From contig MU619341.1 of assembly GCA_025201805.1 (NCBI GenBank), positions 52,566 to 114,765 on the forward strand: DNA of 62,200 bases, in the 5' to 3' direction. Below the pieces are notes generated by a model. It had not been told where the DNA came from and made no database searches. It worked only from the letters and a program-made list of their open reading frames with translations. Source of the DNA: Parasitella parasitica NRRL 2501 (lineage: Eukaryota; Fungi; Mucoromycota). Below, piece after piece: positions 37,682-41,332 of the stretch. The translations under genes were made by a program, and so were the position numbers. Numbering within the stretch: the stretch's first letter is position 1; each line of letters starts with the position of its first letter.

Positions 37682-38671
37682 CTAGAATTCAATGTCGTCT
37701 TGAGCAAACATGCCGCCTAAAGCGACCTTTTCGCCTGTGCTGAAAGCTGGCATTCCCAAGTAGGGACATGTCGAGCATCTAAAGGCATCGCCCAGCGCAC
37801 AACTACCACATCCGCCAGTCTTTTTAGGTGCGGGATCGACTTGTACAATCTCATCTTCAATATCGTCCATCAAATCCAATGAAACAACGTTATTTGACTC
37901 CTTCTCTTCCTCCTCTGCCCTTCCACATGTGCAATTTTTACAGGCTTTTCTCTTTCCGTCAGTCAATTCGCAATCATCAGGTCGAGTCAAAGAGGCTTTG
38001 CTTGGTTTTATCTTATCTTGTTCATCTAATAAAGCATCTTCGTCTTCGAGGTCATCAGCAGCAAGCGCAGTCCAAACAGCCTTCTTTGTGGCATTCTTCT
38101 TTTTACCAAAATTCAAGGCCATCTTTTGTCCAACTTCATAGGCAGGCTTCTTTGCTTCAATATGAGCAATGCCAAATTTACCTGTTAATCGACCCACACC
38201 TTGCTCAACCTTTGTTGTGCCCCACAAACGAAAATAGTCAGCCAGCATGTCATCAGAAACAGGGGCGACATTTGTCACTTTGACGTCTACGAAGCCTGCG
38301 AGCTTCAACATGGATTCTAAATCGGATGCTTTGCGGGTGATGGGACAGACAGTGTTTGCTAAATCAACAAGTAAAACGACTTCCTCCAGGACTAGACGAC
38401 CATCGGCAGCCAACGTAGTCAAATAGCGAGAGAACATGTTTGGTGTATGGGTAGAAACTGAGGGCGTGAATAAGTTTGAATAGATGACGTTGAAACTGGA
38501 TTTGTTCAAAGGAGCATCAGCTACTCTATCGATAACTTCAAATGCGGTTTGTCCAGTAGGGCCAACTGATTGTTCAGCGGATGATTTAACCTGAACAAAG
38601 GTGTTCTGATCAACTGAAGCAGGGGCCACAAATAAAACGTTCTCGCCAACAGAGAGTGTATCAAATGGCAT
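37682..38671 (-). CDS. DRE2: Fe-S cluster assembly protein Dre2/anamorsin
   Basis: C..RKACKNCTCG and GCGSCALGDAFRCSTCPYLGMPAF motifs after a methyltransferase-like N-domain. Confidence 0.96.
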   Translation of the reverse strand: MPFDTLSVGENVLFVAPASVDQNTFVQVKSSAEQSVGPTGQTAFEVIDRVADAPLNKSSFNVIYSNLFTPSVSTHTPNMFSRYLTTLAADGRLVLEEVVLLVDLANTVCPITRKASDLESMLKLAGFVDVKVTNVAPVSDDMLADYFRLWGTTKVEQGVGRLTGKFGIAHIEAKKPAYEVGQKMALNFGKKKNATKKAVWTALAADDLEDEDALLDEQDKIKPSKASLTRPDDCELTDGKRKACKNCTCGRAEEEEKESNNVVSLDLMDDIEDEIVQVDPAPKKTGGCGSCALGDAFRCSTCPYLGMPAFSTGEKVALGGMFAQDDIEF

Positions 38672-38846: not shown

Positions 38847-41332
38847 TCAATAGCCTTCTATGGTCAGTGAAGAAGATGGCTTTTTAATATCTCTTTTGGG
38901 TCTATTCATAATGCTGTCCTTCGCTTTCCATTCATAGGGCAATTGAAATTTGAAATTCGTTTGCGTCGGCAGGCTCTTCCAGTATTTTTTTTGTATGTCT
39001 ACAATTGTTCGGAATGATTCAATCGCACCAAGATTAGGTTTGATTCCGTTCAAAGAATGCTTGAAGCTGGTATTGTTGGACAAGAGCTGTGCCATGCTGG
39101 CTGTCGCGCTATTGGCGAGCGATTCAAGTTCATATCCGCCTTCCAGACTCAAGACCAGCCGATCATGGCACAATTCTTTTGCTAAATCGCATACTATCTT
39201 TGTCATCAAACTGAATCCTTTTGGACTGACGTTATAACCACCCAGCTATTCAAATGCTTAATGTTAAGGGCACTGTACTTTAAACAAATGATCAAATCAC
39301 ATTACGTTCTCGGGATGTCCCTCTGCTGCATCAAATCCAGCAGACACAAATATCTAGGATGAAATAGAATGAGTTGTTTTTTTTTTTTTTTTTTTCATGT
39401 GGCAAGGATAGCGCATATTTTACCATATCGGGTTCAAATTGTCTTGCGATAGGTATCAGTAGATGATAAAACGCAGCTATAAACTCTGTATCACCCATGG
39501 CCTCTATAACATTGAACTTTTAGAACGAGAGATTCACAGTAAAAGTATATTCCATACTTGGTTTATCTTTTGACTCATTCAATGCAATGTTGATGTTGAA
39601 CCCCAAGCCTTCCAACTGCCCGCATTCATCTGGGGCACCACTAAAAGGGTAAAACTTGCCATGCTCCCAGCGATGAACACTAACATACAGCACATTTGGA
39701 TTATCGTAAAAGATCTTTTGTGTTCCGTTGCCATGNNNNNNNNNNAAAAAAAAAAAAAAAAAAAGAATTGATTATTAATACAACAACTACATGTCCAGTC
39801 GCTTGATTCACCACCGCCTTACTGAATGTCCCTATGTAAATCTATTAAAAAAAAACAACAGAAAACATACTTTTGGGTGTATGCTCACACATTACCAGTC
39901 AATGATGAGTATCTTTTTGATTTTTGTTGGGTATCTCTCCATAATTGCGGATACAGCTACTGCAACATTGTTGTAAAAGCAGAATCCCATTGCAGCATCG
40001 TCTTCCGCATGATGGCCAGGTGGTCGAATCAATGCAAACCCGTTTTTAAGTTCCCCTCGAACAATCGTGTCTGCCAGTTCAATCAAACCTCCCGCAGAGA
40101 TCTTCGCAGCTGTTCTGGAGTACTCGGGATGGTACGTTGTGTCTACAGATATGCCTAATTGTCCACAGTTCATTTTATACAGCAATTCTGGCGGATTAAA
40201 TACAGTAGATGGCGATACTTGTTGTTGTAAGGAAGGTTCTATTTTTAACCCAGGTTCTCCTCCTCCAACTCCATACGAGGTTGGTTTCAATATAGGGGAT
40301 GTAGGTGGTGAATAATTAAGTAACGCTGCAATTGATGTTATTTTGATGGGTTTCTGTTCCTGTGTTGTGTTGGGTAGCAGCAATGGGTAATAGTTTCTAA
40401 CATGTGAAAAAGTATGTACACGTAAAAGTTCGTTCGAAGTAACTTCGCGAGCATGGATGCGGCGGAAATATCGCAAAAGTCTAGTTACCGTCTTAGTGCG
40501 CGCAAGACCAGCGCAAATCAGCATGTACATTACCTTTTAGCATGCAATGAATCAAATATCGAAGCCAGTCTTTCGGGTCTTTCGGGGTGGATCATGCGTT
40601 CAGACTCGCAAGGACAATTGTGCAAATTCATCTGTGCATCAGAGACAAGGCCGGTATTCTTCCTCGACTCAAAACCAGCAGGCGAATAGTAAAACTTTTT
40701 AAAATCTGCCCAAGATGACTTTGATTCTCTTCCTTTTGGTCCAAATGACACTGTGTCGTAGTCTGGCACGATGCCATTGTAATCTATCCAACTGGCTTGA
40801 TCTGGCGGCCATCCTTCATAATGCACCAATATATAGGTGGGTGCTAAATCAACAATTCGTGCATAATAATAGGCTCTCTGTTCGACCTTGTAAGCAACAA
40901 CTTGATCCCCCACACGTTTTTGAAAATCTAAAAGGAGAGGACATTGTAAGTGGCTTTTTTGTTTTATTTTTTATTTTTTATTTGCCATACCATCCATTAA
41001 TGGATATTTACCATATTGAGGAACATTATTGCCATGCATAGTTTTAAACTTTTTGGTATCCTTGGCCTCAGTCAGCTCTTTTTTTAATGGCAATATGGCC
41101 GATTTTCTCTTGATTTTTTGCAACGGTTGATGGTGAAGGTAGTTTTCTTTTTGTTGATTGTTGATATCATTCATTGGTGCCATTAATAAATAATTTAAAC
41201 TTGTTACCGTCGTCGTCGTTGTTGTTTGTATCAATGGTGGAGGCTGTGGAGGCTGTGATGGATGATTTGGTGTTGATGGAACCTAATTACTTTCAGAATT
41301 CATCATTTTAAAAATCGAAACCTTACCATCAT
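38847..41332 (-). CDS. Tudor-knot + class IIa-type histone deacetylase, multi-exon (part of the DxH motif falls in the N gap)
   Basis: ILVHYEGW..ASWI; TGLVSD..HNCPC..HPERPERL; NCGQLGISVDT; RPPGHHA; GFCFYNN; HGNGTQ; SAGFDAAEGHPENLGGY; LEGGY. Confidence 0.9.

What the first reader, a model, noticed from the sequence alone, without database searches (positions are those of the whole stretch)
38847..40930. Animal-like class IIa HDAC in a fungus, with the catalytic Tyr retained and a fused Tudor-knot reader
Seen: TGLVSDAQMNLHNCPCE..HPE plus a distal NCGQLGISVDT, and GFDAAEGHPENLGGY. Established: HDAC4/5/7/9 carry a CCHC structural-zinc subdomain (HxCxC..H..CGG.G..DT) and GHP..LGGY, whereas fungal Hda1/Clr3 are usually treated as class IIb-like, with GDP and a C-terminal Arb2 domain. 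This gene ends soon after the catalytic domain and has no Arb2. It has LEGGY (active Tyr, as in invertebrate HDAC4) rather than vertebrate GGH. Upstream, exon 40534-40927 encodes VVAY..YYYARIVD..ILVHYEGW..ASWI, a Tudor-knot/chromo-barrel pattern with aromatic cage residues, in place of the MEF2-binding arm. Inference: an active, self-targeting reader-eraser HDAC lineage retained in early-diverging fungi. I know of no description of this architecture.
Basis: partly seen in the sequence, partly recalled or inferred. Interest (0 to 1): 0.85.

Follow-up and report, generated by a model that had tools for sequence, protein, structure and literature searches.

The report
Fungal class IIa HDAC with reader domain
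This Parasitella (Mucorales) gene encodes a histone deacetylase of the lineage so far described in animals (HDAC4/5/7/9). It keeps every catalytic residue and carries a fused chromo-barrel/Tudor/MBT-like domain, an architecture shared with other early fungi and with ichthyosporeans and apparently undescribed.

Summary
A minus-strand, nine-exon gene (38847-41332) encodes a Royal-family beta-barrel in the same open reading frame as the start of an HDAC domain.

**Class IIa lineage.** The HDAC domain has all four structural-zinc ligands of class IIa (CCHC), GHP..LGGY and the catalytic Tyr. In a careful ML tree the fungal family, four ichthyosporean proteins and animal class IIa form one clade (100/97). 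An AU test rejects grouping the fungal family with fungal Hda1 (p = 0.0003). The model of the close Mucor ortholog matches HDAC4 and HDAC7 first.

**The assembly gap.** The gap hides only an intron's 3' end and one coding base. A 9-nt microexon just upstream encodes Asp-Ile-His, which holds two catalytic zinc ligands. The same microexon is present in the genome's own paralog and in the Mucor ortholog. The deposited gene model skips it.

**Distribution.** The barrel-HDAC fusion is conserved across Mucoromycota and in Neolecta and Ichthyosporea, so it probably predates the fungus-animal split.

**Not tested.** Reader function is unproven. The fungal barrels lack one aromatic cage residue that the ichthyosporean ones keep. 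No RNA evidence could be obtained.

Databases auto-name some members "HDAC4/5". I found no paper describing the architecture. The scan had not noted it before.

The parts
41327..41332 (-). Putative first coding exon (ATG ATG), followed by gtaagg
   Evidence: Sequence. The deposited model P0183 starts MM. No RNA evidence.
40991..41282 (-). Exon 2: low-complexity, basic N-terminal region with no domain. The acceptor is uncertain (41282 here, about 41252 in the deposited model).
   Evidence: Pfam finds nothing here. The donor at 40991 is supported by the orthologous YGK..LM segment in P0182.
40656..40925 (-). Royal-family module: a 4-5-stranded beta-barrel (HYEGW..W signature) plus two helices (GPKGxES..W..Y..FY)
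   Evidence: AF2 pLDDT is about 90 over residues 1-90. Foldseek top hit is the MSL3 chromo-barrel, followed by Tudor, MBT and MRG15. VIA Z is 7.6 to 6.8, with only Royal folds listed. Pfam MBT scores 22 bits, exactly at the cut-off. H35, E37, G38, G62 and W72 are invariant in 44 sequences.
40534..40655 (-). Start of the HDAC domain in the same exon, including the structural-zinc loop HxCxC..H (H102 40620-40622, C104 40614-40616, C106 40608-40610, H113 40587-40589)
   Evidence: These residues are invariant in A1 and A2. They align to HDAC4 H665/C667/C669/H675.
39896..40480 (-). HDAC exon B: a disordered insert, the fourth structural-zinc ligand Cys (40165-40167, NCGQLGISVDT), and the His pair of GHHAE (first His at 40012-40014). 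The exon ends ..IID-W(TG).
   Evidence: The Cys is invariant and aligns to HDAC4 C751.
39823..39831 (-). 9-nt microexon GGACATTCA, encoding (W)-Asp-Ile-His(CA.), i.e. two of the three catalytic zinc ligands
   Evidence: Canonical splice sites. Conserved in paralog C7 and in Mucor locus L015. It fills Pfam positions 149-152. Relatives read DWD[IV]HHGNGTQ.
39736..39745 (.). Assembly gap (N) after a poly-T tract. It hides the intron's acceptor and one coding base (the third base of the His codon).
39558..39735 (-). HDAC exon D (HGNGTQ...)
   Evidence: PF00850 positions 153-206, E 3.5e-17.
39424..39503 (-). HDAC exon E
   Evidence: PF00850 positions 207-231.
39306..39353 (-). HDAC exon F (SAGFDAAEGHPEN), with the third catalytic zinc ligand Asp at 39330-39332
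   Evidence: Aligns to HDAC4 D934.
38847..39245 (-). Last exon: LGGY.., LEGGY with the catalytic Tyr (39132-39134), the KPN..YW helix, a conserved basic tail ending ..EGY, and the TGA stop
   Evidence: The tail is conserved across the family.

Best explanation
The locus is an intact nuclear gene of Parasitella parasitica. It has nine exons and encodes about 650-663 aa; the deposited model is P0183. The product is a zinc-dependent lysine deacetylase of the class IIa lineage (the HDAC4/5/7/9 clade).

**Shown.** The protein has the full catalytic set: the His pair, the Asp-His-Asp zinc ligands (once the microexon is included) and the transition-state Tyr. It also has the four Cys/His ligands of the class IIa structural zinc site. 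A Royal-family beta-barrel is joined, through two conserved helices and without a flexible linker, to the first strand of the HDAC domain.

**Inferred.** The enzyme is catalytically active, unlike vertebrate class IIa, which has His in place of the Tyr. The barrel docks the enzyme on chromatin, most likely on a methylated lysine of a histone tail, so that reading and erasing happen within one polypeptide. Rpd3S achieves the same in trans through the Eaf3 chromo-barrel. The architecture is ancestral to opisthokonts. Animals replaced the barrel with the MEF2/14-3-3 arm, and most Dikarya lost the gene.
For: **Identity and gene model**
- P0183 maps onto these exons, and its contig length equals the end of the window's contig.
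- The model has canonical splice sites and stays in frame.
- The microexon is conserved in the paralog and the ortholog.
- An anamorsin gene lies downstream in both Parasitella and Mucor.

**Class IIa lineage**
- Taken one domain at a time, the best solved-structure sequence matches are HDAC4, then HDAC7, Clr3, Hda1, HDA15 and HDAC6.
- In the IQ-TREE analysis (LG+C20) of the HDAC core, with the CxC loop left out, the joint clade has 100/97 support. Animals alone have 99/96 and the fungal family 100/98. Window exons B and G both fall inside the Mucorales.
- The AU test rejects the fungal family plus fungal Hda1 as one clade (p = 0.000345, delta lnL 52.7).
- H, C, C, H and C are invariant in 52 fungal, ichthyosporean and animal sequences, and they align to HDAC4 H665/C667/C669/H675/C751 (ligands as given in PMC4505066).
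- The AF2 model of ortholog P0182 has pLDDT 83.8 and pTM 0.87. Its first 28 Foldseek hits are all HDAC4 or HDAC7.

**Barrel**
- A home-made HMM finds the module in 65 of 275 proteins fetched by then: the fungal family members that keep their N-terminus and the four ichthyosporeans, but no animal class IIa protein.
Against: - There is no RNA evidence for any splice junction.
- No activity or binding data exist.
- The fungal barrel lacks the third aromatic cage residue. Position 43 is Gln, His or Glu in fungi and Tyr only in the ichthyosporeans.
- The GHHAE loop has low pLDDT in the model.
- The fungal and ichthyosporean sequences group together (84/88) rather than following the species tree. 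Ancient paralogy or a tree artefact is therefore not excluded.
Confidence: 0.75

Rival explanations
1. The identity is the same, but the barrel is not a methyl-lysine reader. It would instead be a structural cap, a regulatory module, or a nucleic-acid or protein-binding module of the enzyme. Some chromo-barrels bind DNA or RNA, and some Royal domains have degenerate cages.
For: - The cage is incomplete in all fungal members (alignment to L3MBTL3).
- The barrel is rigidly joined to the HDAC core, and the whole model has pTM 0.87.
- The conserved positions include non-cage residues: H35, E37, G38 and the GP.G.E...W linker.
Against: - Two or three aromatic positions (Y19/Y20, Y36, W39) and an acidic residue at position 42 are conserved.
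- The ichthyosporean members have the full MBT-like F/Y-W-Y triad.
- All structural neighbours are histone or methyl-arginine readers.
Confidence: 0.35
2. It is an ordinary fungal Hda1/Clr3-type class II deacetylase whose class IIa-like motifs arose by convergence.
For: It is a fungal gene. Clr3 and Hda1 score only slightly below HDAC7 against exon B (79.9 and 76.3 versus 81.7 bits).
Against: - The tree and the AU test reject it.
- All CCHC ligands are present, and they are absent from the Hda1-type rows.
- No Arb2 domain was detected.
- The fold ranking puts HDAC4 and HDAC7 first.
Confidence: 0.03
3. The gene is broken or catalytically dead, as the deposited model implies (it reads IIDW|HGNGTQ, without Asp-Ile-His), or the two sides of the gap are not contiguous.
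For: P0183 lacks D-I-H. The gap is real, and its length is only an estimate.
Against: - A microexon with canonical sites restores the motif and the reading frame.
- The structure is identical in the gap-free paralog and in Mucor, whose deposited protein reads DWDIHHGNGTQ.
- Nine other deposited Mucorales models show the same skip, reading IIDC|HGNGTQ. This points to a gene-caller error.
Confidence: 0.04
4. It is an animal contaminant or a recent horizontal transfer from an animal.
For: The nearest characterised relatives are animal proteins.
Against: - The family is present throughout Mucoromycota and follows the fungal branching order.
- It shares synteny and the microexon with Mucor.
- Identity to animal class IIa is only 36-40%.
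Confidence: 0.01

Closest known systems
Animal class IIa HDACs (HDAC4/5/7/9; invertebrate HDAC4)
   Same: - Same clade in the tree.
- Same CCHC structural zinc ligands, GHP..LGGY motif, CG.xG..DT hairpin and KPN..YW C-terminal helix.
- Like the invertebrate-type members, it keeps the catalytic Tyr.
   Different: - It has no MEF2/14-3-3 regulatory arm and no glutamine-rich domain; a Royal barrel stands in their place.
- The structural-zinc loop is one residue longer.
- The alternative ligand His678 is Arg or Gln.
- It carries a disordered insert inside the HDAC domain and a different C-terminal tail.
Fungal Hda1 / Clr3
   Same: Class II HDAC fold, catalytic Tyr, fungal host.
   Different: It falls in a separate clade. 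Hda1-type rows have no CxC..H..C ligands and read GD[PTVQS] rather than GHP. No Arb2 domain was found here.
Rpd3S (Rpd3 with the Eaf3 chromo-barrel) and MSL3/MRG15 chromo-barrels
   Same: A chromo-barrel-like reader is coupled to a histone deacetylase. The HY.GW......W signature is shared. MSL3 is the top Foldseek hit, and Eaf3 in Rpd3S also appears.
MBT repeats (L3MBTL1/3, SCML2, Sfmbt)
   Same: This is the best Pfam match, at the cut-off. Weak sequence matches and structural matches with Z about 7 were found.
   Different: It is a single barrel rather than a repeat array, it lacks the MBT arm, and the cage Tyr is replaced by Gln.
HDAC6 (deacetylase plus zf-UBP ubiquitin reader)
   Same: A precedent for a class II deacetylase fused to a reader domain.
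   Different: HDAC6 belongs to the class IIb clade.

Membership tests
Class IIa HDAC (HDAC4/5/7/9 lineage) | The catalytic domain groups with HDAC4/5/7/9 rather than with Hda1/Clr3 or HDAC6 | tested here: met
   Clade support 100/97. The AU test rejects the Hda1 grouping, p = 0.000345. HDAC10 and named plant HDA5/15/18 were not in the tree.
Class IIa HDAC (HDAC4/5/7/9 lineage) | Structural zinc site with ligands C667, C669, H675 and C751 (HDAC4 numbering) | tested here: met
   All four are invariant and aligned. The ligand set is taken from PMC4505066. The 3D geometry was not measured.
Class IIa HDAC (HDAC4/5/7/9 lineage) | Long N-terminal regulatory arm (MEF2-binding motif, 14-3-3 phospho-sites, glutamine-rich domain) | tested here: not met
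   The N-terminus is about 100 low-complexity residues followed by a Royal barrel. Pfam finds no other family. No specific profile for the MEF2 motif was run.
Class IIa HDAC (HDAC4/5/7/9 lineage) | Catalytic Tyr replaced by His (vertebrate members only) | tested here: not met
   The motif is LEGGY. Non-vertebrate rows of the animal clade also have Tyr, so this does not define the lineage.
Class IIa HDAC (HDAC4/5/7/9 lineage) | Fold closest to solved HDAC4 and HDAC7 structures | tested here: met
   Ranks 1-28 are all HDAC4 or HDAC7, with E 3e-40 to 2e-33. The model is of ortholog P0182, not of the window's own protein.
Hda1/Clr3 family | C-terminal Arb2 domain | tested here: not met
   The last exon matches only PF00850, and the protein ends about 95 aa after LEGGY. 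The genome-wide PF09757 scan was uninformative because its controls were silent.
Hda1/Clr3 family | Groups with fungal Hda1 in a tree | tested here: not met
Royal family (chromo-barrel / Tudor / MBT) | Small SH3-like beta-barrel of 4-5 strands | tested here: met
   AF2 predicts strands 8-13, 18-27, 31-36 and 45-48 with pLDDT about 90. Nearly all structural neighbours are Royal domains: Foldseek probability 1.00 with best E 1.3e-3 and VIA Z up to 7.6. The atlas search gives mostly MBT, Tudor-knot and Tudor clusters.
Royal family (chromo-barrel / Tudor / MBT) | Aromatic cage for a methylated residue | tested here: inconclusive
   Y19/Y20, Y36 (Y/F) and W39 (W/F/Y) are conserved. The MBT cage-Tyr position is Gln, His or Glu in fungi and Tyr in the four ichthyosporeans. 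Binding was not tested.
Pfam MBT (PF02820) | Score at or above the gathering cut-off | tested here: inconclusive
   22.0 bits against a cut-off of 22, E 1.9e-4, covering only profile positions 10-45. The precomputed Pfam for all relatives lists PF00850 alone.

The most novel reading that the evidence does not exclude
The last common ancestor of fungi and animals had a catalytically active class IIa deacetylase that carried its own methyl-lysine reader: a barrel with a complete cage, as ichthyosporeans still have. The animal class IIa 'pseudo-enzymes' would have arisen by swapping this barrel for the MEF2/14-3-3 arm, and in vertebrates later by the Tyr-to-His change. In Mucoromycota the fusion would still couple a histone methyl mark directly to deacetylation. 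It may also recruit an Snt1/NCoR-type corepressor through the conserved structural zinc domain.
Probability: 0.3. Interest if true: 0.8.

Novelty: new variant of a known kind. Interest (0 to 1): 0.62.

Why it matters
The papers I read treat class IIa HDACs only in animals. They describe them as signal-regulated scaffolds whose weak catalysis is puzzling.

This finding has three consequences.
- An active-looking, reader-fused version is conserved across Mucoromycota, Neolecta and ichthyosporeans. That places the structural zinc domain before the fungus-animal split.
- It suggests what the lineage did before it acquired the MEF2 arm.
- It offers a genetically tractable system, Mucor lusitanicus, in which to test the native function of the class IIa fold and its zinc domain.

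There is also a practical point. A 9-nt microexon carrying two catalytic zinc ligands is skipped in at least ten deposited Mucorales gene models, so those proteins look dead in the databases.

Tried and rejected
- **Arb2 scan.** The own-genome PF09757 scan found nothing, but its controls were silent too, so it is uninformative.
- **Large tree.** A 153-row IQ-TREE run did not finish. It was replaced by FastTree on 152 rows and a careful 76-row tree.
- **Wider distribution.** The region-limited homolog search of the barrel module returned only 14 close relatives, because of the word-index limit. The A2 profile search was swamped by two-domain HDAC6 proteins and added only more Mortierellomycotina. 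Presence in chytrids, Zoopagomycota and Basidiomycota therefore remains unknown.
- **Atlas.** The protein-atlas search gave no usable hit.
- **Other HDAC loci.** A blastx classification of the genome's other HDAC loci was confounded by multi-domain subjects. It only confirmed that C7 corresponds to P0190.
- **Papers not held.** The Bottomley 2008 paper and the journal version of the chromatin-evolution paper are not held. The preprint's main text has no passage on this fusion among those shown.
- **Exons not joined.** Searches were run exon by exon, by reference. Whole-protein steps used the deposited model P0183 or the intact ortholog P0182.
Full report
**Gene model and the gap**

The feature is a minus-strand gene. 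Reading the reverse strand and the ORF list gives nine exons:

| Exon | Coordinates | Content |
|---|---|---|
| 1 | 41327-41332 | ATGATG, tentative start |
| 2 | 40991-41282 | low-complexity N-terminal region |
| A | 40534-40927 | barrel and start of the HDAC domain |
| B | 39896-40480 | HDAC |
| microexon | 39823-39831 | 9 nt |
| D | 39558-39735 | HDAC |
| E | 39424-39503 | HDAC |
| F | 39306-39353 | HDAC |
| G | 38847-39245 | HDAC end, tail and TGA stop |

All introns are GT..AG. The coding length is 1992 nt, counting one base hidden in the gap. That is a multiple of three.

Pfam PF00850 matches the exons in order, at profile positions 25-148, 153-206, 207-231 and 246-297. The four missing positions are exactly what the microexon GGACATTCA supplies: (W)-D-I-H. 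These residues include two of the three ligands of the catalytic zinc.

The N run (39736-39745) follows a poly-T tract and directly precedes CATGGCAACGG (HGNG). It therefore hides only the intron's acceptor and the third base of a His codon. Two independent sequences confirm this.
- The genome's own paralog on contig C7 has no gap. It reads ..GACTG|gtaag..gtag|GGACATACA|gtaagt..gttag|C CATGG...
- The Mucor lusitanicus ortholog reads ..GACTG|gtaaa..gtag|GGACATACA|gtaag..gtag|T CATGGCAACGG... Its deposited protein contains DWDIHHGNGTQ.

**Organism and deposited model**

Protein P0183 is a Parasitella parasitica hypothetical protein (BD408DRAFT_446605, 650 aa). It maps onto these exons.

The deposited model skips the microexon and reads IIDW|HGNGTQ. 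Nine other deposited Mucorales models read IIDC|HGNGTQ, which is the same skip. This is a gene-caller error, not a dead gene.

Searches were run exon by exon, by reference. P0183 or the intact Mucor ambiguus ortholog P0182 served for whole-protein steps; P0182 is 85% identical to the window over the barrel exon.

**The HDAC domain belongs to the class IIa lineage**

- **Sequence ranking.** Against solved structures, single-domain scores for exon B rank HDAC4 (87.6 bits), HDAC7 (81.7), Clr3 (79.9), Hda1 (76.3), HDA15 (74.1), HDAC6 domains (about 66) and HDAC10 (60). Only the HDAC4 and HDAC7 alignments reach back over the NCGQLGISVDT hairpin. Exon G and the end of exon A give the same order.
- **Wider relatives.** A search of 1.8 billion representatives and a homolog search show a conserved family. 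It covers Mucorales, Umbelopsis, Mortierellomycotina, Bifiguratus and Glomeromycotina (Dentiscutata), and the early ascomycete Neolecta. Four ichthyosporean proteins also belong: Chromosphaera, Creolimax and two from Sphaeroforma.
- **Tree.** I built trees from the HDAC core only, leaving out the HxCxC..H loop. In FastTree on 152 rows the joint clade is supported at 99. In the careful IQ-TREE analysis (LG+C20, 76 rows) the clade of animal class IIa, the fungal family, the ichthyosporeans and one unnamed protein has 100/97 support. Animals alone have 99/96 and the fungal family 100/98. Window exons B and G, entered as separate rows, both fall inside the Mucorales.
- **Outgroup identities.** Rows named HDA1 or hda1 from Basidiomycota (Ceraceosorus, Tilletia), and an unnamed ascomycete protein (Peltaster) that I took for Hda1-type, lie outside this clade. 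So do HDAC6 CD1 and CD2.
- **AU test.** Forcing the fungal family together with these fungal Hda1-type rows is rejected (delta lnL 52.7, p-AU 0.000345).
- **Structural zinc ligands.** In a 52-sequence alignment, H, C, C, H and the hairpin C are invariant. They align to H669/C671/C673/H679/C755 of a vertebrate HDAC4 ortholog. I infer a numbering offset of +4 from human HDAC4, based on its identical HQCTCGSSSSHPE loop and its length of 1088 aa. These residues then correspond to human H665, C667, C669, H675 and C751. PMC4505066 gives C667, C669, H675 and C751 as the closed-form zinc ligands, and H665 and H678 as the open-form substitutes.
- **One difference from animals.** The H678 position is Arg or Gln in the fungi and ichthyosporeans. 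The alternative ligand set is therefore animal-specific.
- **Catalytic residues.** The His pair, D-H-D and the Tyr of LEGGY are all present. In the tree, His replaces the Tyr only in a sub-clade that includes the HDAC4 ortholog. This agrees with PMC12383505, which places the substitution in vertebrates.
- **Fold search.** An AF2 model of P0182 residues 90-646 has pLDDT 83.8 and pTM 0.87. Its 28 best Foldseek hits are all HDAC4 or HDAC7, ahead of HDAC6 and HDA15.
- **Limit.** I could not measure distances at the zinc site, because coordinates are not exposed.

**The N-terminal domain**

The barrel lies in the same stop-free exon as TGLVSD..HNCPCESERMIHPE. The domain join therefore does not depend on splicing.

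Sequence evidence is weak. Pfam gives MBT at 22 bits, exactly the cut-off, and Chromo at E 0.045. The best sequence matches among solved structures are L3MBTL3 MBT repeats at E 0.05.

Structure evidence is stronger. With a 44-sequence alignment, AF2 predicts residues 1-90 at pLDDT about 90. The model has four main strands with a short fifth element, followed by two helices formed by the conserved GP.G.E...W..Y..FY segment. In the longer model these helices run straight into the first HDAC strand.
- Foldseek lists almost only Royal domains. The MSL3 chromo-barrel is first (E 1.3e-3, rmsd 2.3 A over 63 columns). Krimper and TDRD1 Tudor, L3MBTL and SCML2 MBT, MRG15, PHF20L1 and Eaf3 in Rpd3S follow.
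- VIA-align gives tied Z scores of 7.6 to 6.8 for TDRD3 and SMN Tudor, Sfmbt and SCML2 MBT, Tip60 and MRG2.
- The ESM Atlas search gives mostly MBT, Tudor-knot and Tudor clusters.

The fold is therefore Royal-family, but the sub-type cannot be decided.

The signature H-Y-E-G-W-x6-W matches the HY.GW......W pattern of chromo-barrels and the HF.GW...Y..W pattern of MBT. In the HMMER alignment to L3MBTL3, the MBT Tyr pairs with Gln43 here. I identify that Tyr as a cage residue from memory of the MBT structures, not from a tool. Across 44 family members, position 43 is Q, H, E, D or R in fungi and Tyr only in the four ichthyosporeans. Y36 (Y/F), W39 (W/F/Y) and W46 are conserved. Reader function is plausible but unproven.

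**Distribution and history**

An HMM of the barrel module, built here, finds it in 65 of the 275 proteins fetched by then (73 domain hits). These are the fungal family members that keep their N-terminus, including Neolecta, Bifiguratus and Dentiscutata, and the four ichthyosporeans. No animal class IIa protein has it.

The simplest reading is that the barrel-HDAC fusion predates the fungus-animal split. The barrel was lost or replaced on the animal stem, and the whole gene was lost in most Dikarya.

The fungi and ichthyosporeans group together at 84/88, which does not follow the species tree. Ancient paralogy or retained ancestral states could explain this. The tree is unrooted, so I leave the question open.

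**Prior knowledge**

- NCBI auto-names several Mortierellomycotina and Apophysomyces members 'Histone deacetylase 4' or '5'.
[quoted passage not shown] It is the only held paper that contains 'class IIa', 'HDAC' and 'Mucoromycota' together.
- Searches on Mucorales HDACs, unicellular holozoans and reader-eraser fusions found no description.
- The passages of the chromatin-evolution preprint returned for deacetylase, Tudor, MBT and fusions say nothing about this fusion.
- The precomputed Pfam for every relative lists PF00850 alone. A domain-architecture survey would therefore miss the barrel.

**Verdict**

The gene is intact once a conserved microexon is recognised. It is a new architectural variant of a known enzyme class, with an interesting evolutionary implication.

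Noticed in passing
window 39823-39831; L012 (paralog, contig C7); L015 (Mucor lusitanicus): A conserved 9-nt microexon encodes Asp-Ile-His, which includes two catalytic zinc ligands. It is skipped in the deposited model of this gene (P0183, IIDW|HGNGTQ). It is also skipped in nine other deposited Mucorales proteins, which read IIDC|HGNGTQ: P0157, P0160, P0171, P0177, P0189, P0190, P0193, P0202 and P0212.
   Followed up: yes
window 38847-38960 (C-terminal tail): The tail after the HDAC domain is conserved across the family: RF.LP..W, then a basic RP.R...K stretch. In most Mucorales, Umbelopsis and Bifiguratus members the protein ends exactly at ..(E/P)GY. Mortierellomycotina end differently. 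The function is unknown; the basic stretch could be a nuclear localisation signal.
   Followed up: partly
window 40190-40390 (exon B residues about 30-95): A disordered, low-complexity insert lies inside the HDAC domain, between the first helices and the zinc hairpin (pLDDT below 50 in the ortholog model). It grows to about 350-450 residues in Mortierellomycotina.
   Followed up: partly
alignment A2, column of HDAC4 His678: The alternative 'open-form' structural-zinc ligand His678 (HPEH in animals) is Arg or Gln in all fungal and ichthyosporean members (HPER/HPEQ).
   Followed up: partly
alignment A1, window exon A residue 43 (40797-40799): The cage position that is Tyr in MBT repeats is Tyr in the four ichthyosporean homologs, but Gln, His, Glu, Asp or Arg in all 40 fungal ones.
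   Followed up: partly
window 37682-38671 (minus strand): The intron-less downstream gene encodes an anamorsin/Dre2-type protein (CIAPIN1). The same neighbour follows the ortholog in Mucor lusitanicus, so synteny is conserved.
   Followed up: partly
G000 contig C7:267115-268520 (L006/L012): Parasitella has a second barrel-HDAC paralog (P0190 or P0202). Many other Mucorales also show two or three copies.
   Followed up: partly
P0026 (Neolecta irregularis): The deposited Neolecta protein joins this HDAC to a GH76 mannosidase (DCW1). This is probably two merged gene models, and the protein is named only after the mannosidase.
   Followed up: no
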